Shown: positions 414-55,436 of the stretch, one piece after another | Layout: each line of letters starts with the position of its first letter | Numbering within the stretch: position 1 is the first letter of the stretch | Assembly (NCBI RefSeq): GCF_001194135.2 | Contig: NC_068991.1 | Location: forward strand, 33,972,404 to 34,029,332 | DNA: 56,929 bases | Source of the DNA: Octopus bimaculoides | Lineage: Eukaryota | Direction: 5' to 3' | Notes under the pieces: generated by a model | Database searches by the model: none | What the model was told of the DNA's origin: nothing | Seen by the model: the letters and a program-made list of their open reading frames with translations, nothing else | Translations under genes and position numbers: made by a program

Positions 414-1826
414 TTAGCTAACATTTTTATATAAATAAAGTAATTTATGTCTACATTTTATTTTTCATTCATCAAAAGAATTAAGCAAATTATTATCCTT
501 ATGAAATAATATCTCTTTAAATTCATTATTACATAAATTACAAAAAATATTACTTATATGATAGGATTTTGCCTTACAAACTATCTCCCATTTTAAAGTA
601 TAGTTAATGTTTTTAGATTTAAGTTCCCAAATATATTTATTAAGGCCAGTAGAATTAATCAAATTTCTATTCTTAAATGAGTGCATATGTTGAGCCACTC
701 GTAATTTAATTTTATCAGAAGTCGATCCTATATAAATCTTATTTAGATTATAACCATTATGTTTATTCCCATTCATTAACGTCACTATACATTTATGCAC
801 TACATCCTTCAAATTACATTTATTATTAAATTTATGTTTAGTCTTATCTAAACATGTACAATTAATTATATCCTGGTCCACATTATTATTATTATTATTA
901 GAATAATTATTAAATTTATAATACATATTTAACTTAAATCTATTAAAAGAAGAGATAATATAAGCAACATTATTAGTAGTAGAATAACCTACACCAAAAT
1001 TATTATTAGAAAATATATAATGATATTTTTTAACTCTAAGGAATATATCAATAACTTTTAAAATTTCGTTAATAAGGTTAGTTTTAACTTGAACGCCGTA
1101 TGGAATAATTAGCCAGAGTTTGTTCTTATTATAGATATTATTGTATTTATTATTAATATTATTAAATTTATTATTATCTTTAAAAAAATTAACATTAAAA
1201 TTAAAATTATATTTATTATTGTTTCTATTAAAATTATGTTTATGTAATTTATTATCATAATACCTATCATTCTTATTATAATTACCTAAGGAGACAGTAT
1301 CATGAGTATAAAGGTTATGTTTATTAAAAAGATCATTACTATTATAATCATTACTAACAAAATTATAATTATATTTCGGATTATTAAAAAATTTTATATC
1401 ATTAGTATATCCCGCCTTTTGAAGGGCTTTATGGTAATAAGGTGCATGTTTTTCAAAGATCTCTATATTCAAAGAGAGTAAAGATATTCTCTTACCTATA
1501 GTAAATGTTAATGATTTTTTAATTGAGGGTGGGTGATTACTTTTCACATGAATGTATTTAATATTTTCATTAATCTTATGGTAAGGTTGGGTATTACCTG
1601 TAGATAAGTTAAAATAATTTATATTATAGTACTCATTATAAAGAGTAATCTTTAAACCATTTCTTTTAAAAAAATTATATATTCTCTTCTTATATAATTC
1701 TAGTTTTCTATTAGTGCAATTTTTAGTAAGTAATAAAAGGTCATTCCTATATAAATCACCCTCCAATTTTAAGTTTACAAGTTTTGAATAGAATTGATTT
1801 TCGATAGTTTTAATCGATTTAAATTT
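414..1826 (-). mobile_element. Penelope-like element ORF: RT C-terminal half, thumb, Asn-rich linker, GIY-YIG endonuclease
   Basis: Frame is open from the gap edge (1826) to TGA at 465-467. Motifs: LYRND (for YRDD), GLKIT, PYHK..YIHVKSNHPPSIKK, YHKALQKAGY, VKTNL, CTC..C, IYIGST..KLRVAQH, YIWELK, LKWEIV, CNLCNNE, LLN. After the TGA the same frame reads KIKCRHKLLYLYKNVS* (stop at 414-416). Confidence 0.9.
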
Positions 1827-4185: not shown

Positions 4186-4722
4186 GGTCTCACCGAGGCG
4201 ATGACTTCTGACCGAAACCTTTGGAAATATGCTGTGAATGAGAAGACCCGGCAAGCCAAGTGAGACCTAAACCCAAGGCCTCTGCCAGGGGTGTAGCCAG
4301 CCCACTTATGTGTACCTTTCCTTCATTGGACACTAAACTCCACTTGTGAAGACTCGTTGGAGCAAGCAAAAGCAAAATCATGATGGCACCTGTGCCCAGC
4401 GTCGCCTTCCTGGCACTTGTGCCGGTGGTACGTGTAAAGACATTCGAGTGAGATCATTGCCAGTGCCACTGGACTGGCTCCTGTGCAGGTGGCACGTAAA
4501 ATAGATCATTTTGAGCGTGGTTGTTGCCAGTACGGCCTGACTGGCCTTCGTGCCGGTGGCACGTAAAAGCACCCACTACACTCTTGGAGTGGTTGGCGTT
4601 AGGAAGGGCATCCAGCTGTAGAAACTCTGCCAAATCAGATGGAAGCTTGGTGTAGCCATCTGTTTCACCAGTCCTCAGTCAAATCGTCCAACCCATGCTA
4701 GCATGGAAAGCGGACGTTAAAC

Positions 4723-4773
<51 letters not shown>
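4186..4773 (+). mobile_element. RTE-clade LINE 3' end (last codons, 3' UTR, (GAT)n tail)
   Basis: Matches 6868-7727 (…ggaaatatgctg…gagaagacccggca.gccaagtgagacc…; tail cccatgctagcatggaaagcggacgttaaacgatgat). Confidence 0.85.
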
Positions 4774-5730: not shown

Positions 5731-7727
5731 AGAGAAAGCCTTTGACAGGGTCCTCTGATCCCTTATCTGGTGGTCAATGAGGAAACTAGGAATAGAAGAA
5801 TGGTTAGTGAGAGCTGTGCGAGCCATGTACAGAGACGCTGTCAGTAAGGTGAGGGTTGGCAATGAGTATAGTGAAGAATTCTGCGTAGAGGTAGGTGTCC
5901 ACCAAGGTTCTGTCCTCAGCCCCCTCCTATTTATCATAGTCCTCCAGGCGATAACAGAGGAATTCAAGACAGGATGCCCCTGGGAGCTCCTCTATGCTGA
6001 CGACCTTGCACTAATTGCTGAGTCACTATCAGAACTAGAGAAGTTTCAGGTATGGAAGCAGGGACTAGAATCGTAGGGCCTTAGAGTCAATCTAGCTAAA
6101 ACCAAAGTCCTTATAAGTAGAAAGGTAGAGAAAACACAAACCACTTCAGGCAGATGGCCCTGCTCAATTTGTAGAAAAGGTGTAGGTAGAAACTCTCTAA
6201 GATGCACCTAGTGCAAGCTATGGACACATAAGAGGTGCAGCAATATCAAAGGCAGGTTAAGTAGGAAGTTAGTTTTTGTATGTGGCAGATGTTCAGGTGC
6301 AATAAACACTGCAAACAAACAGGAAACAACTTCTGTCTCTTTCCAGGGAGAAAAACTAGAGGTAGTTGATAGCTTCCGCTATCTGGGTGACCAAGTTAGT
6401 AGTGGGGGTGGGTGCGCTGAAAGTGTAGCTGCTAAAATAAGAATAGCCTGGGCAAAGTTCAGAGAGCTCTTACCCCTGCTGGCGACAAAGGGCCTCTCAC
6501 TCAAAGTAAAAGGCAGACTGTATGACGCATGTGTACGAACAGCCATGCTACATGGCAGTGAAACATGGGCTGTGATTGCTGAGAACATGCGTAAGCTCAC
6601 AAGAAATGAAGCCAGTATGCTCCGATAGATGAGTAATGTCAGTTTGCATATCCGACAGAGCGTAAGTATCTTGAGAGAAAAGTTGAACATAAGAAGCATC
6701 AGTTGTGCTGTGCAAAAGAGACGATTGCGCTGGTGTGGACATGTGGTGAGAATGGATGAGGATAGCTGCGTGAAAAAGTGCCACACACTAGCGGTTGAGG
6801 GAACCCGTGGAAGAGGCAGGCCTAGGAAGACCTGGGATGAGGTGGTGAACCACGACCTCCAAACATTAGGCCTCACTGAGGCAATGACTTTTGACCGTGA
6901 CCTTTGGAAATATGCTGAGCGTGAGAAGACCCGGCAGGCCAAGTGAGACCAAAATCCAAAGCCTCTGCCAGGGATGTAGCCAGCCCACTTATGCATAACA
7001 TTCCTTTATTGGACACTAAACTCCGCTTGCGAAGACATGGTGAGGCAAGTGAAATCGAAATCGAACTATATTTGTAGGAACACTAAACTTGGCTTGCCAA
7101 GACCTGTTGAGGCAAGCGAAAGTGAAATCATGATGGCACTTGTACCAGTGGAGCACTAAGAGCACCGTCCGATCGTTGCCAGAGCAGCTGTCTGGCTTCC
7201 GTGCCGGTGGCACGTAGATAGCACCAGCGTGATCGTTATCAATGTCGCCTTCCTGGCACTTGTGCCAGTGGCACGTGAAAAGTTATTCGAGCGTGATCGT
7301 TGCCAGTGCTGATGGACTGGCTCCTGTGCAGTTGACACGTAAAATACACCATTTCGAGCGTGCCTGTGGATCGTTACCAACGTTGCCTTCCTGGCACTTG
7401 TGCCAGTGGCACATGAAAAGACCTTCGAGCGAGATCATTGCCAATGCCAATGGACTGGCCCTTGTGCAGGTGGCATGTAAAATACACCATTTCGAGTGGC
7501 TGTTGCCAGTACCCGCCAGACTGGCCCTCATGCCAGTGGCACGTAAAAGCACCCACTACACTCTCGGAGTGGTTGACGTTAGGAAGGGCATCCAGCGTTA
7601 GAAACTCTGCCAAATTAGATTGGAGCCTGGTGTCGCCTCCTGGTCCACCAGTCCTCAGTCAAATCGTCCAACCCATGCTAGCATGGAAAGCAGATGTTAA
7701 ACGACGACGATGATGATGATGATGATG
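5730..7727 (+). mobile_element. 5'-truncated RTE-clade LINE (RT with inserted PHD finger, tandem-repeat 3' UTR, (GAT)n tail)
   Basis: EKAFDRV, GVHQGSVLSPLLF, LLYADDL, GLRVNLAKTK, FRYLGD, RRLRWCGHVVRM, RGRGRPRKTW; stops at about 6073, 6209 and 6628 show it is inactive. Confidence 0.92.
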
Positions 7728-8389
7728 TAACTTTATAGTACTGAGTAATCTGAGCTTGAACAAACAAGTTTTCTGTTGGAAGCCAGTGGAATTTCAAGTT
7801 GCATGTAGTCAAATCAAACAGTTTAAAATAACAGTATATATATAACTTCTATAAATATATTGAGTTCTTTTTTCTTCCATTTGTCCACTCATCTGTCTGT
7901 CTGTCTGTATGTATTTAATAACAACAACAATAATCCTTGGACAGAATTTACAAGCATGTAACACATTGCTACATGAATTTCCACAAATCACATGTCTCTT
8001 AAGATCACAGTCCTTATTCCTGGGATGATTACAGTGTAGTCCGTAGTATCCATGGGTATTGGGTTGATCATCTTCATGGATTCATTTCTTCAGGTGATAT
8101 AACATTAATGGATGTTTAACAGAGAGATGTTTATCCCTTTTGACTAGTTTGAAGATTGATTCAGTTATGTGGGTATTTCTATGTATATTTGGTGGAGTGG
8201 AAGGGAAGGTGATTGAAAGAGAGGAAGGAATAATAGTTATATGGGGATGGAGGTGTGTGGTGATGTTTGACTTACTTTGCTATTCAGTCTGCAGATGTCA
8301 ATGATGGGTAGTACATTTCTTTGTTCGATCTCATTTAAGATATGACTATTTTGAGTGAACTCTTAAGTAAACAGATCAGCCAGTACAGC

Positions 8390-16190: not shown

Positions 16191-17145
16191 TACAGCCTTC
16201 CCCCAGATTCAACAAATAAAAAAGATATTAATCTCAGTCTCAGGAAAGAGTAATGGATGCTGTCCTTCCTTTCCTAAGCTACAAAAAATCATGCATATTT
16301 TAGAACCTTTCATTCAAAGACATTGCCCTATTCCTGAGTTCCTCTTTCACGAACTTTCCTTTAACCAGAACCCCATTCAAATGTCCTTCTGAGCCAACAT
16401 CAAGGCACAAAACATTTAAATTCAAGTGAGATTCACTACCTAAAAATATTTAATTAGTATTTAGATAATCTAACCAGGTAAGAATATCATAATTTAGTCA
16501 ACATCAGTATAAAATTATAACAGGCAAAGTGCGAAATCTAAGGAAAGAGAATAGGAAGTCTTACTCAGGGAGGCACCAATATGTAGTTTTGATAGCTTTT
16601 AACAAATGCATATCACTGCAACAGTAAAAAAAAAAAAAATAATAATTTCAACAATTAACATTAATTTTAATACGACCGAATATTTCCCTTTTATTTCTTT
16701 TTTTCCTTCCATTTTTGTAGTTATATATATATATATATATATATANNNNNNNNNNNNNNNNNNNNNNNNNNNNNNNNNNNNNNNNNNNNNNNNNNNNNNN
16801 NNNNNNNNNNNNNNNNNNNNNNNNNNNNNNNNNNNNNNNNNNNNNNNNNNNNNNNNNNNNNNNNNNNNNNNNNNNNNNNNNNNNNNNNNNNNNNNNNNNN
16901 NNNNNNNNNNNNNNNNNNNNNNNNNNNNNNNNNNNNNNNNNNNNNNNNNNNNNNNNNNNNNNNNNNNNNNNNNNNNNNNNNNNNNNNNNNNNNNNNNNNN
17001 NNNNNNNNNNNNNNNNNNNNNNNNNNNNNNNNNNNNNNNNNNNNNNNNNNNNNNNNNNNNNNNNNNNNNNNNNNNNNNNNNNNNNNNNNNNNNNNNNNNN
17101 NNNNNNNNNNNNNNNNNNNNNNNNNNNNNNNNNNNNNNNNNNNNN

Positions 17146-18365
17146 ATAGCTTTTAATAACTCCTTAACATCAGAGGGGTAAACTTCACCAATTGTTCCAA
17201 TTCGAAAGCAGTTCGCTTCCAAGACTTTGCCAGGGTATATTACAAAATCTAAATCGTTTAATTTGCTGTAGAATGTATTAAAATCAAAATGTGGATCGCT
17301 GGGAAAGAAAAATGAAGTTATAATATAATTTGCTTGATTTGGATCCGTCAACAACTCTTTGAAACCAAGTGTTTTCATACCTTTTCCCAAAATAGATCGA
17401 TTTTCCATATATCTAGCTGACCTTCCTTTCAAGCCACCTTCTTGTTCATATTCCACGATAGCTTGCTGAAATGCCAGCATCGTATGTGTTGGGGGAGTAA
17501 ATCGAAACTGGCCTGTCGCCTCTAAGTTTTGATATTGATCATAAAGATCCAAAGTGAGACAGCGAGAATATCCACGGCATTCTAATAGCTTTCTAGTTTT
17601 TGCAACTACGTAAGAGAAACCAGGAACACCTTGTAAACATTTGTTTGCTGAACTGACCATGAAGTCAATATCACCGGCGGCGAAATCAAGCGGAACTGCA
17701 CCAAAACTACTCATTGCATCCACAAAATATATACAATTCTGAAGGTATTTTTTGACGATCTGCCCGACATCCACAATCGGGTTGAAAACTCCAGAACTTG
17801 TTTCACAGTGAACAATAGCGACATGAGTAAATGAGGAATCAGTTTTCAAAACATCTTCAACAACATTAACATTTACAGCAGAGCTTTCAGGGAAGCTCAG
17901 TACACGTTTTGAAATACCTGCGACTTCACAGATTTTTGCGATACGTTTACCGTAGGCACCGTTTTCTAAGATCAGAACTTTACCATCACTCCGGGGAACT
18001 GTCGATTGAAAGACAGCTTCGACAGCGTATGTTCCACTGCCTTGTACTGGTATTGACGTATATTCAAGATTGCTTACTTGTGCGATGTCCAGAATTTTCT
18101 GCCGAATATTTCTTACACACTGGATGAATTGAATGTCTCGCGAACCTAGATCTTTTAACATAGCCTCACGCACTGTCGATGTGGTGCATAGAGGACCTGG
18201 TGTAAAAAGTTTCTTTTCAACTTCAGTCGACTGGTAATTCACATGTTGCAGAGTACTCCCAGGTGCGGAAATTCGGAGAGAAGTGAAACTGTGTGGAGAA
18301 AACGTTTGGATTAATCTAAACAACGATACTGGACGGAAAAATCTGCACTGCATATTGGCTGACAC
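17146..18365 (-). CDS. phnW: 2-aminoethylphosphonate-pyruvate transaminase (class V PLP aminotransferase), intronless; C-terminal codons lost in gap 16746-17145
   Basis: More than 400 uninterrupted codons. Motifs: KKLFTPGPL, DLGSRD, QGSGTYAVEA, NGAYGKR, VHCETSSG, VDAMSSFG, SSANKCLQGVPG (PLP lysine), LDLYDQ, QFRFTPPTH, VIYPGK, FRIGTIG. The WRFT/FRFTP.TH and IYPGK motifs are characteristic of PhnW rather than AGXT/SerC. Confidence 0.93.
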
Positions 18366-18580
18366 GTATACGCTCCAACAAATCTCGACTGTGTTGTTGT
18401 ATTGAGTATATTGAAAGTTATTTCCCTTGGAGCAGCGTCAATCAGCGTCATACTTATGACGCCGATATTCAATATTAATTTCTAGTGGAAGCAATGATCG
18501 CCAGCTTTGTAAATTGAGGACAGTCGAACAAATTAATTTCAGGGCATATGTTGACAAATATAGTTTTGACGTCTTCTACT
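18366..18580 (-). promoter_or_regulatory. Probable phnW 5' UTR / proximal promoter with clustered CRE/ATF-like sites
   Basis: Non-repetitive and CpG-retaining; CGTCA at 18436-18440 and 18446-18450, TGACG at 18457-18461, TGACGTCT at 18567-18574. Confidence 0.4.
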
Positions 18581-31905: not shown

Positions 31906-32080
31906 ACACACTCTCTGAGTGGTTGGCGTTAGGAAGGGCATCCAGCTGTAGAAACTCTGCCAAATCAGACTGGAGCCTGGTGTTGCCATCCGGTTTCACC
32001 AGTCCTCAGTCAAATCGTCCAACCCATGCTAGCATGGAAAGCGGACGTTAAACGATGATGATGATGATGATGATGATGAT
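31906..32080 (+). mobile_element. Isolated RTE 3' tail (a related minus-strand tail lies at 32142-32260)
   Basis: Near-identical to 4578-4773 and 7558-7727; ends in (GAT)n. Confidence 0.85.
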
Positions 32081-32459
32081 ATATCTATATACACACATAT
32101 AAATATAAACATAATATGTGTATGTATATATATGCATGCATATCATCATCATCATTTAACGTCCATTTTCCATGCTGGCATGGGTTGGACGGTTTGACAG
32201 GGGCCAACAAGCCTGGGGCTATGAATGGCATCTGTCTAGTTTGGCATGGTTTGACATAATAGACATTTTTATATTGTTATGATTCTATAGACCTTGGTGC
32301 AAGTTGACTGAAAACCTGGGACCCACCAAAATTGTTCCCAATTGGGCCCCGCACCTCGTATGGCTGGCTCATGCATGTATAAATATATATAAGTAAATAA
32401 ATGGAGTTAAATGCAAATGTTATTCAAATTCTTTTACTTTCAACATATTTGACTGGTGC

Positions 32460-33684
32460 AAGCAAAACTATTTGGTTTGTTATTCCATATGGAAGGCAAA
32501 TTAAATCTAATCTTCCTTTGCAGTTCCATGAAGCGGTTAGTAAGAACTTTCCAAAAAATTCTAGATATTATTCCATTCTCATATAGTTAGAGTTGCCTTC
32601 TCCAACACAAAGAATCTTTCACAAATCATATCTTCTCATAATACCAGTCTGCTAGATAAAAGTTCATTTACTGAGAGTTCCAAGATTAATTTAATACCAG
32701 CCTTTCCCATAATAATAATAATAACATAGTTTTGGTCTCTGAGTACAACCCCAACAGAATTAAATTTATGTCTAATAATTCTAAGATTAAGAATTCTATA
32801 TACCATTGTAAAATTACTTCTGGTACCGATGTCTATTTCTATATTGGGGCTTCCTCTTCCCAGTTATCTAAGAGAATTTCCAATCATTATTCTTCATTTA
32901 GGGATTGCACAGGGCTTAGTAAATTGGTTTGGTATCTTAGAGACAACAATAAGGATTTTAATTTAGCTTGGTTCATCCTGTCCATCTCTTTCCCTTACGA
33001 CAAGGGCAAAGGATTTTGTAACATTTGTAATTCTAAACTCTTCCATATTTTCTTCTCTAAGAATCAACTTGTTAACACACTTATAGAGCGATCTTACAAA
33101 TGTAAGCATTGGCAGAAACACACCTTTAGCTCATATAAGTGATTTATACCAGTCTGTATAGTTTGAACATTTAGTTGCACTCTACTTCAATAGAGAAATC
33201 TACTTCCAAGCCTTTGAAAATTTTTTCAACTAACATATCCCTCTATATCTCTTTATTTGTTCTCTACTTATTATTTCTTTACCCCTTCTCTTCCTATGGT
33301 CTATTTTTGACGTAGGATCTACTAATGGTTATTTAAAAATACTTAATAGCGTTCTGCTTATCATTTATGAAGTCATCAAAATTGTTATTATGTCTTCTTG
33401 TTGAGATTGGTTCTCCTTCTTTCCTGATGAGATTACATTATTTTACACCGTTTATTCCTTTGGAATAAAGCTAATGTTGCCTTCGAAACATTTGTCGAAA
33501 GTAAAAGAATTTGAATAACATCCATGTTTAACTCCATTTACTTATACTATACAAATTACTGCACATTAACCCAGAGTTTCTGTCTTTGAATAGATCACTA
33601 CATCCTTGTTACTTGCGTGAATTTTGCTACCCTGGTAACTGTTTATTGAATTTTTTGTGTTAACTGTAAACAAAGGATTATTCA

Positions 33685-54689: not shown

Positions 54690-55436
54690 TGTACGCCACT
54701 TGTGAACTTCTTCGTGTTCCAGATCCTTGAAACTACAAAATATAATTATAATGGGAGAAGGAGATACTCCACAGGTATCATAAACCTTCAATTCCATTAT
54801 AAAATGGTGACCCTGACCAAAAAAAGGATTTTTGGCAGCCAAAAGCTTTATCGTTGTAGATGCCTCACCTGAACGGCATTACCAACTTCGCTCCCATTAC
54901 CAACTAAAAAATCAATGGCCCGACATCAGAATATCTTCTCTTGTTCAAGTGAACCTTTAGAATTTGTGTTCTTTGCCTTGAACTTGTACCTTGCAGAGTA
55001 TGCATTCTTCTTACAAAGAAATATGCGGTATTCTTTCAAATCACGTGGAAACTGCCTAGCTAAAAACGTAGTATACTCTTGTGAAATAATTACGGAAACT
55101 AACACCCTCACCTACCTTGGGTGCTCTTCATCCTGGAAATCTAGGTTCTATAACCACAGGTTTTCGTTTAGATTCAGACATAAGGCTAATAGCACCTCAT
55201 TATCTCATAGAATTTGGGAGCTTAAAGACGATAACATTAATTTTAACCTTAGATGGTCCATAGTTGGATCGGCCGCAACGTATAGAGATGATAGAACTGG
55301 TTGCCAGTTATGCTCCTTAGAACTATTGAAAATTATTAGATTCCCTGATAAGAATAAGCTAATTAATAAGAGATCAGATTTCAAACCTTCCTGTATGCAT
55401 AAAATGATTAAAACCTTTAGATATTATAATCCCTAA
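54690..55436 (+). mobile_element. Penelope-like fragment ending in a GIY-YIG ORF (54915-55436)
   Basis: GNCLAKNVVYSCEI..TYLGCSSSWKSRFYNHRFSFR..NSTSLSHRIWELKD..LRWSIV..CQLCSLE..LINKRSD..CMH. Confidence 0.88.

What the first reader, a model, noticed from the sequence alone, without database searches (positions are those of the whole stretch)
17146..18365. Single-exon, probably mitochondria-targeted phosphonate transaminase (PhnW/AEPT) in an animal genome
Seen: an intact intronless ORF with all PhnW motifs and a ~47-residue N-terminal extension rich in R/S/F/L with no acidic residue, typical of a mitochondrial presequence; it sits alone among transposons. Established: molluscs make 2-aminoethylphosphonate lipids (CAEP) via PEP mutase, phosphonopyruvate decarboxylase and AEP transaminase; in bacteria PhnW also starts AEP catabolism with PhnX or PhnY/A. 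Inference: part of an animal C-P bond pathway with a mitochondrial step. The lack of introns suggests a retrocopy, intron loss or horizontal acquisition.
Basis: partly seen in the sequence, partly recalled or inferred. Interest (0 to 1): 0.75.

Follow-up and report, generated by a model that had tools for sequence, protein, structure and literature searches.

The report
Intronless octopus aminoethylphosphonate transaminase gene
This is the octopus copy of a phosphonate-making enzyme gene (AEP transaminase) that is already annotated in sister octopus species and found across invertebrates; its one unusual trait is that squid, cuttlefish and octopus relatives lost all seven introns that other molluscs keep, most likely through an old retrocopy.

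Summary
An uninterrupted minus-strand ORF runs from the ATG at 18353 to 17146, where a 400-N assembly gap cuts it. It encodes 402 residues of a 2-aminoethylphosphonate:pyruvate transaminase (PhnW/AEPT) and passes three curated PhnW equivalog models. It is 99% identical to the RefSeq "2-aminoethylphosphonate--pyruvate transaminase" of Octopus sinensis, so the gene is already known. The family is present from sponges and cnidarians to molluscs, arthropods and echinoderms.

- **Not horizontal transfer:** the coleoid sequences form a 100%-bootstrap clade among the mollusc sequences, and all sampled bacteria separate from the animals at 100%.
- **Intron loss:** oyster, scallop, apple snail and chiton share seven coding introns at identical positions and phases. 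Four octopod genomes and one decapodiform-like genomic contig have none. This points to a retrocopy-type total intron loss before the octopus/cuttlefish split. The copy is functional (core dN/dS about 0.06).
- **N-terminal extension:** the 46-residue extension is real, lies outside the folded domain, and has mitochondrial-presequence composition. It is ancestral: 60 animal orthologues carry one, on its own exon 1 in the five intron-bearing genes mapped. Octopus PEP mutase has a similar extension. Mitochondrial targeting is plausible but unproven.

Overall this is an ordinary gene with a modestly interesting gene-structure history.

The parts
17146..18353 (-). Single coding exon of the AEP:pyruvate transaminase (PhnW/AEPT), codons 1-402, cut at its 3' end by the assembly gap
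   Evidence: ORF; NCBIfam PhnW equivalogs above cut-off; 99% identity to O. sinensis P0001
18216..18353 (-). Codons 1-46: N-terminal extension, a candidate mitochondrial presequence (MQCRFFRPVSLFRLIQTFSPHSFTSLRISAPGSTLQHVNYQSTEVE)
   Evidence: No D/E in the first 43 residues, net positive; pLDDT below 50 for residues 1-43; N-terminal motif M..(S)RP(V/I).LF.R.I.T conserved in Octopus/Sepia-type sequences and only loosely in Argonauta; equivalent extension on exon 1 in bivalves, a gastropod, a chiton and Nematostella
17146..18215 (-). Catalytic class-V aminotransferase core (residues 47-402)
   Evidence: PF00266; 353 bits to solved PhnW 9kk8 over residues 46-400; confident AF2 model; dN/dS 0.05-0.08
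17640..17642 (-). Codon for Lys238 in the SSANK motif, the expected PLP Schiff-base lysine
   Evidence: Invariant column K238 in the 17-sequence alignment; aligned to SSANKC of solved PhnW; codon read directly
16746..17145 (.). Assembly gap of 400 N hiding the last 16 codons, the stop codon and the proximal downstream sequence
   Evidence: O. sinensis and O. vulgaris loci continue with IKTVCLEMNITLPLDD-stop
18354..18542 (-). 5' flank or leader, collinear without interruption with O. sinensis and with octopod Logan contigs; in-frame TGA at 18438-18440
16471..16745 (-). Downstream flank after the gap: (TA)n microsatellite followed by sequence conserved with O. sinensis

Best explanation
The window comes from an Octopus genome. 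It is close to, but not the same as, O. sinensis; O. bimaculoides is my guess. It carries the single-copy orthologue of animal 2-aminoethylphosphonate:pyruvate transaminase.

**Function.** The enzyme is PLP-dependent and interconverts phosphonoacetaldehyde plus L-alanine with AEP plus pyruvate. In an animal that also has PEP mutase and makes ceramide-AEP lipids, it most likely acts as the last step of AEP biosynthesis. That role is inferred.

**Gene structure.** The structure is derived. The molluscan ancestor had seven coding introns, and coleoid cephalopods have none. All seven were lost together, before octopods and cuttlefish-type decapodiforms split. The most likely route is reverse transcription of a spliced mRNA, followed either by insertion and loss of the parent gene or by gene conversion of the parent. 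The copy has stayed under strong purifying selection.

**N-terminal extension.** The 46-residue extension was inherited with the mRNA. In intron-bearing relatives it is encoded by exon 1. It is most likely a cleavable mitochondrial presequence, which would place this step, and probably PEP mutase, in mitochondria. That is inferred and not shown.
For: **Identity:**. Invariant Lys238, Asp212 and Arg384 columns.

**Already annotated and widespread:**; PMC3640398.

**Uninterrupted ORF in cephalopods:** O. sinensis, O. vulgaris genomic DNA (418/418 codons in one HSP), Argonauta hians, and a 52.9-kb genomic contig. That contig is 82% nt-identical to a Sepia pharaonis RNA-seq contig (SRR3011300 identified in PMC5541922).

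**Ancestral introns:** seven introns at identical alignment columns with phases 1,1,0,1,1,2,1 in Ostrea, Pecten and Pomacea, and six of the seven mapped in Liolophura. Nematostella shares the phase-2 intron at the A313 column exactly and also has a phase-1 intron at the end of the extension, as the molluscs do.

**Vertical descent:** coleoid clade 100/100, lying among the mollusc sequences; the split separating all sampled bacteria from the animals is 100/100. The best bacterial identity is 55%, against 60-66% to other molluscs.

**Functional constraint:** core dN/dS 0.05-0.08 and extension 0.3-0.7.

**Pathway:** octopod PEP mutase P0178 and P0174 are 81-82% identical to the Mytilus enzyme. 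That gene spans 67 kb with about 9 exons, so intron loss is specific to phnW. CAEP lipids occur in O. vulgaris.

**Presequence:** across 60 animal orthologues with an extension of 30 aa or more, the first 25 residues hold 1.7% D+E against 12% in the core, and 11.4% Arg against 4.8%. Mean net charge is +3.6, and 58 of 60 are net positive. Residues 1-43 are unstructured in AF2. The next in-frame Met is M65, inside the conserved core. There is no PTS1-like C-terminus and no signal-peptide-like hydrophobic run. Animal PEP mutases carry an acid-poor, basic extension of about 35 aa relative to the 295-aa Mytilus PDB chain.
Against: - No retroposition hallmarks (poly(A) tract, target-site duplications) were found. 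The 3' end lies in the gap, and an event this old would have lost them anyway.
- Relocation is only weakly shown. The proteasome-alpha neighbour is shared by the two bivalves only; it is absent from the octopod flanks and also from the short snail and chiton flanks I had.
- I could not search whole cephalopod genomes, so a surviving parent copy, or the state in Nautilus, is unknown.
- The best helical hydrophobic moment of the extension is matched by 15-59% of shuffles, depending on window length. The only MPP-like site is a generic R-2 motif (R27-I28|S29).
- Phosphonopyruvate decarboxylase in Octopus was not found, because the search returned only bacteria.
- A catabolic role on dietary AEP is not excluded.
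Confidence: 0.8

Rival explanations
1. The gene was acquired by horizontal transfer from bacteria, which would explain the lack of introns.
For: Intronless ORF. About 50-55% identity to bacterial PhnW. An older paper scored AEPT transcripts in bdelloid rotifers as foreign (PMC3499245).
Against: The coleoid clade lies among the mollusc sequences, and the tree broadly tracks animal phylogeny. The split separating all sampled bacteria from the animals has 100/100 bootstrap. The N-terminal extension is shared with intron-bearing mollusc and cnidarian orthologues. An intron position is shared between Nematostella and molluscs, so the gene is old in animals. The gene is embedded in octopus repeats and is collinear with chromosome-level O. 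sinensis and O. vulgaris assemblies.
Confidence: 0.02
2. It is a processed pseudogene, or a non-functional retrocopy of an intron-bearing parent located elsewhere in the genome.
For: Intronless, surrounded by retrotransposon fragments, and truncated in the window.
Against: The truncation is an assembly gap. The ORF is intact in O. sinensis, O. vulgaris, Argonauta and a decapodiform-like contig. Core dN/dS is 0.05-0.08 at dS up to about 1.1. The Sepia pharaonis orthologue is recovered from RNA-seq. No second octopod PhnW appears among the 120 best database hits.
Confidence: 0.03
3. The enzyme works in catabolism. It would convert dietary AEP, abundant in the molluscs and crustaceans that octopuses eat, to phosphonoacetaldehyde for C-P cleavage, rather than finishing biosynthesis.
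For: The PhnW reaction is reversible, and in most bacteria PhnW starts AEP degradation (PMC8154272 abstract). The family also occurs in arthropods and echinoderms, where it lacks the extension. Octopus ppd was not demonstrated.
Against: Octopods keep PEP mutase, the committed C-P-forming enzyme. They contain CAEP and N-methyl-CAEP lipids. I looked for no phosphonatase or PhnY/PhnA homologue, so there is no positive evidence for a catabolic partner.
Confidence: 0.15
4. The N-terminal extension is not a mitochondrial presequence. It would be a disordered cytosolic tail or another kind of signal, and the enzyme would be cytosolic.
For: Amphipathicity is not above shuffled controls. The sequence is poorly conserved between phyla. 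Arthropod, echinoderm and hemichordate orthologues, and a Dreissena isoform, do without it. No localisation data were found.
Against: Presequence-type composition is maintained in 58 of 60 extensions across sponges, cnidarians and lophotrochozoans while the sequence itself drifts. That pattern is typical of targeting peptides. There is no hydrophobic h-region and no PTS1. PEP mutase has a matching extension that is absent from the 295-aa Mytilus enzyme chain in the PDB.
Confidence: 0.35

Closest known systems
Bacterial PhnW / AepZ, 2-aminoethylphosphonate:pyruvate aminotransferase (solved structures 1M32 from Salmonella, 9KK8, 7E7G)
   Same: Same family by curated equivalog HMMs. About 50% identity over the whole core (353 bits). 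Same SSANK lysine, VDAMSS aspartate and C-terminal CFRIG arginine columns.
   Different: This is a eukaryotic nuclear gene with a 46-residue N-terminal extension. It is not in an operon with phnX or with pepM/ppd, unlike the bacterial locus L053.
Animal AEP-pathway genes (Acropora/Nematostella PEP mutase, Ppd, AEPT: Shoguchi et al. 2013, PMC3640398; RefSeq AEPT of Octopus sinensis, O. vulgaris, bivalves, gastropods)
   Same: Orthologous: 99% identity to O. sinensis and 60-66% to other molluscs. Same type of N-terminal extension.
   Different: Non-cephalopod molluscs have 8 coding exons, Nematostella has 4, and Acropora is reported with 4 introns. Coleoid cephalopods have a single coding exon.
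Orphan or replacement retrogenes (an intronless retrocopy becomes the only functional copy after the parent is lost); comparison from my own background knowledge
   Same: All ancestral introns are absent at once. The full coding sequence including the targeting-peptide exon is retained. Purifying selection is strong, and no parent copy appears among annotated proteins.
   Different: The classic hallmarks (poly(A) remnant, target-site duplications, demonstrably new locus) could not be shown. Conversion of the original locus by cDNA recombination is equally possible.
AGXT / alanine-glyoxylate aminotransferase (same Pfam family PF00266). My own background knowledge is that its mitochondrial versus peroxisomal location varies between species through use or loss of an N-terminal presequence
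   Same: Same fold family. It sets a precedent for presence or absence of an N-terminal presequence varying between lineages, as seen here between lophotrochozoans/cnidarians and arthropods/echinoderms.
   Different: Much lower similarity (51-82 bits against about 350 for PhnW). There is no PTS1-like C-terminus. The substrate is different.

Membership tests
PhnW / AEP:pyruvate transaminase | Scores above the curated cut-offs of the equivalog HMMs | tested here: met
   NF010006 463.1 bits (cut-off 296), TIGR02326 448.7 (400.8), TIGR03301 433.1 (360.8)
PhnW / AEP:pyruvate transaminase | Class-V (fold-type I) aminotransferase domain with the PLP lysine and the aspartate that binds the pyridine nitrogen | tested here: met
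   PF00266 at E 1.9e-21. K238, D212 and R384 are invariant columns and align to solved PhnW. The AF2 core is confident. Assigning roles to these residues rests on my knowledge of the family.
PhnW / AEP:pyruvate transaminase | Closer to characterised PhnW than to AGXT/SPT or other class-V enzymes | tested here: met
   345-353 bits to 1m32 and 9kk8, against 51-82 bits to AGXT/SPT chains
PhnW / AEP:pyruvate transaminase | Complete reading frame through the C-terminus | tested here: inconclusive
   In the window the last 16 codons fall in the N gap. The frame is complete in O. sinensis and O. vulgaris at 99-100% identity.
PhnW / AEP:pyruvate transaminase | Catalyses AEP + pyruvate <-> phosphonoacetaldehyde + L-alanine | not testable with these tools
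   Needs an enzyme assay
Animal AEP biosynthetic pathway | PEP mutase present in the same lineage | tested here: met
   O. vulgaris P0178 and Argonauta P0174, 81-82% identical to Mytilus PEP mutase. The O. vulgaris gene spans 67 kb and is multi-exon.
Animal AEP biosynthetic pathway | Phosphonopyruvate decarboxylase present in the same lineage | tested here: inconclusive
   A search seeded with a bacterial Ppd returned only bacterial proteins among the 120 listed. No animal seed sequence was available.
Animal AEP biosynthetic pathway | AEP-containing end products in the organism | tested here: met
   Literature: 29 CAEP and 6 N-methyl-CAEP species in O. vulgaris muscle (PMC12335516)
Mitochondrial matrix presequence | N-terminal extension outside the folded domain, lacking acidic residues, net positive, rich in Ser/Thr/Arg | tested here: met
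   46 aa, first D/E at residue 44, 4 basic against 2 acidic residues, 11 Ser/Thr. pLDDT below 50 for residues 1-43.
Mitochondrial matrix presequence | Amphipathic helix | tested here: inconclusive
   Best hydrophobic moment 0.60 (11-mer) or 0.49 (18-mer) is reached by 735 and 300 of 2000 shuffles
Mitochondrial matrix presequence | Processing-peptidase cleavage motif, positive call by a trained predictor, and experimental localisation | not testable with these tools
   Only a generic R-2 candidate (R27-I28|S29) seen by eye. TargetP, MitoFates and localisation data were not available.
Retrogene (retroposed functional copy) | All introns of the ancestral gene are absent at once | tested here: met
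   Seven conserved mollusc introns, none in five cephalopod genomic loci
Retrogene (retroposed functional copy) | Poly(A) remnant and target-site duplications, and a new genomic location relative to the parent | tested here: inconclusive
   The 3' end is in the gap. In O. sinensis an AATAAA is followed by (TA)n, with no clear A-tract. The bivalve PSMA neighbour is absent near the octopod genes, but also from the short snail and chiton flanks.
Retrogene (retroposed functional copy) | The functional copy is under purifying selection | tested here: met
   dN/dS 0.065-0.12 overall and 0.05-0.08 in the core

The most novel reading that the evidence does not exclude
In animals the whole AEP (C-P bond) biosynthetic route would be ancestrally mitochondrial. 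Both PEP mutase and AEP transaminase carry presequence-like N-terminal extensions from sponges and cnidarians to molluscs. On the transaminase, the extension is absent in arthropods, echinoderms and hemichordates and optional in at least one bivalve. Coleoid cephalopods fixed the presequence-bearing isoform when an intronless retrocopy replaced the 8-exon gene. I found no statement of this compartmentation in the searchable literature.
Probability: 0.4. Interest if true: 0.5.

Novelty: already known. Interest (0 to 1): 0.28.

Why it matters
The gene adds little on its own. It is the expected octopus orthologue of an enzyme already annotated in octopus RefSeq and known in animal genomes since at least 2013.

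Two by-products could be useful:
- **A clade marker.** All seven ancestral introns were lost before the octopod/decapodiform split. This marks coleoid cephalopods cleanly and is a documented case of an intronless copy becoming the sole functional gene. It also exposes a mis-modelled O. vulgaris protein (321 aa instead of 418).
- **A testable hypothesis.** Presequence-like extensions recur on both PEP mutase and AEP transaminase across non-bilaterian and lophotrochozoan animals. This suggests that phosphonate synthesis in animals is mitochondrial, which would bear on where PEP for C-P bond formation comes from.

Tried and rejected
1. **Ppd in Octopus.** I seeded the last database search with the Ppd of a verrucomicrobial pepM-ppd-phnW cluster (L053). 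All 120 listed hits appear bacterial or metagenomic, none named as animal, so this was a dead end.
2. **Localisation literature.** Three searches for subcellular location of AEP-pathway enzymes found nothing usable. Sarkar et al. 2003 on T. cruzi PEP mutase is not held.
3. **Amphipathic helix test.** The extension is not distinguishable from shuffles.
4. **Synteny test for relocation.** The proteasome-alpha neighbour is shared only by the two bivalves, so its absence near the octopod gene says little. Argonauta and Octopus flanks align only in repeats.
5. **Logan contigs L002-L004 as transcript evidence for an intronless UTR.** I dropped this. They end in (TA)n on both sides, their library type is unknown, and their last 127 nt match the window in inverted orientation.
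6. **P0007 as a possible Nautilus outgroup.** It groups with heterodont bivalves.
7. **O. vulgaris P0005 (321 aa, 86% identity) as a possible paralogue.** It is a faulty gene model over an intact 418-codon ORF.
8. **Signal peptide or PTS1.** Neither a hydrophobic h-region nor an SKL-like C-terminus is present.
Full report
**What is in the sequence.** The feature lies on the minus strand. The ORF tool starts it at a GTG (18365), but the first in-frame ATG is at 18353-18351. Reading upstream, there is an in-frame TGA at 18438-18440 and no ATG in between. The frame runs uninterrupted to 17146, where a block of 400 N (16746-17145) begins. This gives 402 codons. The 418-residue O. sinensis and O. 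vulgaris proteins continue with IKTVCLEMNITLPLDD, so 16 codons and the stop are hidden by the gap. The window is 37% G+C with eight N gaps.

**Identity.** Pfam finds only Aminotran_5. Three NCBIfam equivalog models for 2-aminoethylphosphonate:pyruvate transaminase are passed with margin: 463 bits against 296, 449 against 400.8, 433 against 360.8. The next family scores 102 bits against a cut-off of 600. Against all PDB chains, the best matches are solved PhnW enzymes (9kk8 at 353 bits, 1m32 at 345 bits, covering residues 46-401). AGXT and serine-pyruvate aminotransferases score 51-82 bits. The SSANK lysine (K238, codon 17640-17642), D212 in VDAMSS and R384 in CFRIG are invariant in a 17-sequence animal alignment. 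An AlphaFold model has a confident core (mean pLDDT 79, pTM 0.78) from about residue 47. It is PhnW.

**It is already known.** The best database hit, at 99% identity, is RefSeq [quoted passage not shown]. Further hits carry the same name in O. vulgaris and in bivalves, gastropods, a chiton, crustaceans, insects, echinoderms, hemichordates, amphioxus, cnidarians and a sponge. Non-coding flanks are about 90-93% identical to O. sinensis and synonymous divergence is 0.10. The window is therefore a congener; O. bimaculoides is my guess, not a result. AEP-pathway genes in an animal genome, including the transaminase with four introns, were described for Acropora in 2013 (PMC3640398).

**Not horizontal transfer.** I built a neighbour-joining tree of 48 animal or eukaryotic sequences and 16 bacterial ones, the latter translated from the closest bacterial genome loci (best 55% identity). 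The split separating all sampled bacteria from the animals has 100/100 bootstrap. The six coleoid sequences form a clade with 100/100 that lies among the mollusc sequences. Echinoderm-hemichordate, arthropod, cnidarian, gastropod and bivalve groupings are broadly recovered. This is vertical inheritance.

**Gene structure, the part that is unusual.**
- The coding region is one uninterrupted ORF in the window, in O. sinensis, in O. vulgaris genomic DNA (418/418 codons in one HSP) and in Argonauta hians.
- It is also uninterrupted in a 52.9-kb ENA genomic contig. That contig's coding sequence is 82% nucleotide-identical to a contig from run SRR3011300. PMC5541922 lists that run as Sepia pharaonis RNA-seq, so the contig is decapodiform-like.
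- I mapped exons exactly, requiring GT-AG boundaries and an exact translation across each junction. Ostrea edulis, Pecten maximus and Pomacea canaliculata each have seven coding introns at the same alignment columns, with phases 1,1,0,1,1,2,1. The sites fall after the positions of Octopus residues ~39-45, A91, K125, Q205, R260, A313 and L368. In the chiton Liolophura, six of the seven could be mapped.
- Nematostella has three introns. It shares the phase-2 intron at the A313 column exactly. It also has a phase-1 intron at the end of the N-terminal extension, as the molluscs do; the column there is not alignable.
- The ancestral mollusc gene therefore had eight coding exons, and coleoids lost all seven introns. 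Simultaneous loss of every intron points to a cDNA intermediate: either a retrocopy that replaced its parent, or conversion of the parent by cDNA. Because octopods and the decapodiform-like contig share the state, the event predates their split.
- By contrast, the O. vulgaris PEP mutase gene spans 67 kb with about nine exons. Intron loss is specific to this gene.

**Is the copy functional?** Nei-Gojobori dN/dS is 0.065 against O. sinensis, 0.085 against another octopod and 0.10 against Argonauta (dS about 1.1). It is 0.05-0.08 in the catalytic core. The Sepia orthologue is recovered from RNA-seq. No second octopod PhnW appears among the 120 best hits. The apparent O. vulgaris variant (321 aa) is a faulty model with a spurious intron over an intact ORF. 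A processed pseudogene is excluded.

**What I could not show for retroposition.** The 3' end lies in the gap. In O. sinensis an AATAAA is followed directly by a (TA)n tract and a palindromic insertion, with no clear A-tail or target-site duplication. The proteasome-alpha gene that lies head-to-head with the oyster and scallop genes is absent from the octopod flanks, but also from the short snail and chiton flanks I had. Relocation is therefore not demonstrated.

**The N-terminal extension.**
- *In Octopus.* It is 46 residues, with the first acidic residue at position 44, four Arg and 11 Ser/Thr. AlphaFold leaves residues 1-43 below pLDDT 50.
- *Start codon.* The next in-frame Met is M65, past the near-invariant KKLFTPGP segment. 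A downstream start giving an intact enzyme is unlikely.
- *Not octopus-specific.* 60 of the 120 best animal hits have an extension of 30 aa or more. In their first 25 residues, D+E is 1.7% (core 12.0%), Arg 11.4% (core 4.8%) and Ser+Thr 18.9% (core 12.1%). Mean net charge is +3.6, and 58 of 60 are net positive.
- *Distribution.* It occurs in a sponge, cnidarians, a priapulid, annelids, a brachiopod and molluscs. It is absent in the listed crustaceans, insects, echinoderms and hemichordates, and in a Dreissena isoform that begins MADKKLFTPGPL.
- *Exon and conservation.* In the intron-bearing genes it is essentially exon 1. Within cephalopods an N-terminal motif M..(S)RP(V/I).LF.R.I.T is kept in Octopus and Sepia-type sequences, and only loosely in Argonauta. 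The extension evolves faster than the core but below neutrality (dN/dS 0.3-0.7).
- *Other signals.* There is no signal-peptide-like hydrophobic run and no PTS1-like C-terminus.
- *Weak point.* The best helical hydrophobic moment is not above shuffles. I had no trained predictor and found no localisation data.
- *Conclusion.* I rate mitochondrial import as the most likely function of the extension, at about 0.55-0.65.

**Pathway context.** I recovered the Mytilus PEP mutase sequence from a PDB alignment. With it I found PEP mutase in O. vulgaris and Argonauta at 81-82% identity. Animal PEP mutases are 320-340 residues, against the 295-residue Mytilus chain in the PDB. The extra ~35 N-terminal residues are again basic and acid-poor, for example Octopus MAAKLLSVVYTTNRTISNGFKGAVLNGSRWMHSSQ and Nematostella MLRPTFTRSVVLGRNFVRSLSVRKNSSQ. 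O. vulgaris muscle contains 29 CAEP and 6 N-methyl-CAEP species (PMC12335516). Together these favour a biosynthetic role as the last step of AEP synthesis. The phosphonopyruvate decarboxylase of Octopus was not found because my search returned only bacterial proteins. A catabolic role on dietary AEP remains possible.

**Surroundings.** The window holds LINE-type reverse transcriptase and zf-RVT ORFs (13.5-15.2 kb), LTR-element RNase H (37.6-38.1 kb), another RT fragment (46.1-46.7 kb) and a weak, sub-threshold integrase match (48.2-48.5 kb). I recognised no other host gene.

**Verdict.** The gene is an already annotated, vertically inherited orthologue. Its intronless state is a real, lineage-wide derived character of coleoid cephalopods, best explained by an old retrocopy-type event. 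The presequence idea is reasonable and applies to the ancestral animal enzyme rather than to Octopus in particular. Interest is low to moderate.

Noticed in passing
window 465-1766 (-), 32732-33142 (+), 54915-55436 (+): Three ORFs share a domain of about 110 aa (35-38% identity, blastp E 1e-14 to 1e-19) with a YIG(S/A/C)(S/T)S...R...H motif. There is no Pfam hit even at E<=1. By eye it resembles a GIY-YIG endonuclease of Penelope-type elements, but this is unverified.
   Followed up: partly
window 4577-4746, 7563-7737, 31908-32083; also L001 and L005: A repeat of about 170 bp recurs in the window and in the O. sinensis and Argonauta loci at 72-89% identity. It is probably an octopod SINE.
   Followed up: no
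L098 2809-4062 (O. vulgaris OX597824.1): The deposited O. vulgaris AEPT model (P0005, 321 aa, gene span about 9.9 kb) is mis-annotated. The genome has an intact 418-codon single ORF that starts 192 nt upstream of the modelled start.
   Followed up: yes
P0133, P0178, P0174, P0135, P0149, P0207 (PEP mutases): Animal PEP mutases carry a basic, acid-poor N-terminal extension of about 35 residues. It is absent from the 295-aa Mytilus chain in the PDB, which starts at Met35 of the 329-aa M. galloprovincialis protein.
   Followed up: partly
L053 3135-7119 (Verrucomicrobiota MAG): A bacterial pepM(-nucleotidyltransferase fusion)-ppd-phnW cluster. Its PEP mutase domain is strikingly close to the Mytilus enzyme: 458 bits over 291 aligned residues.
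   Followed up: no
L010 9710-10455 (Pomacea canaliculata): About 1.5 kb downstream of the 8-exon Pomacea gene there are further tblastn matches to residues ~141-266 at 61-83% identity. This suggests a partial tandem duplicate or pseudogene.
   Followed up: no
L002-L004 versus window 16612-16745; L001 11614-12100: The octopod Logan contigs end in (TA)n on both sides. Their last 127 nt match the window in inverted orientation relative to the CDS. O. sinensis has a palindromic, MITE-like insertion between two (TA)n tracts just downstream of the AATAAA after the stop codon. The 3' flank is a rearrangement-prone microsatellite region and coincides with the window's gap.
   Followed up: partly
P0032 (Dreissena polymorpha isoform X2): This isoform begins MADKKLFTPGPL, without the N-terminal extension. 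At least one bivalve may therefore make forms with and without the presequence from alternative first exons.
   Followed up: no
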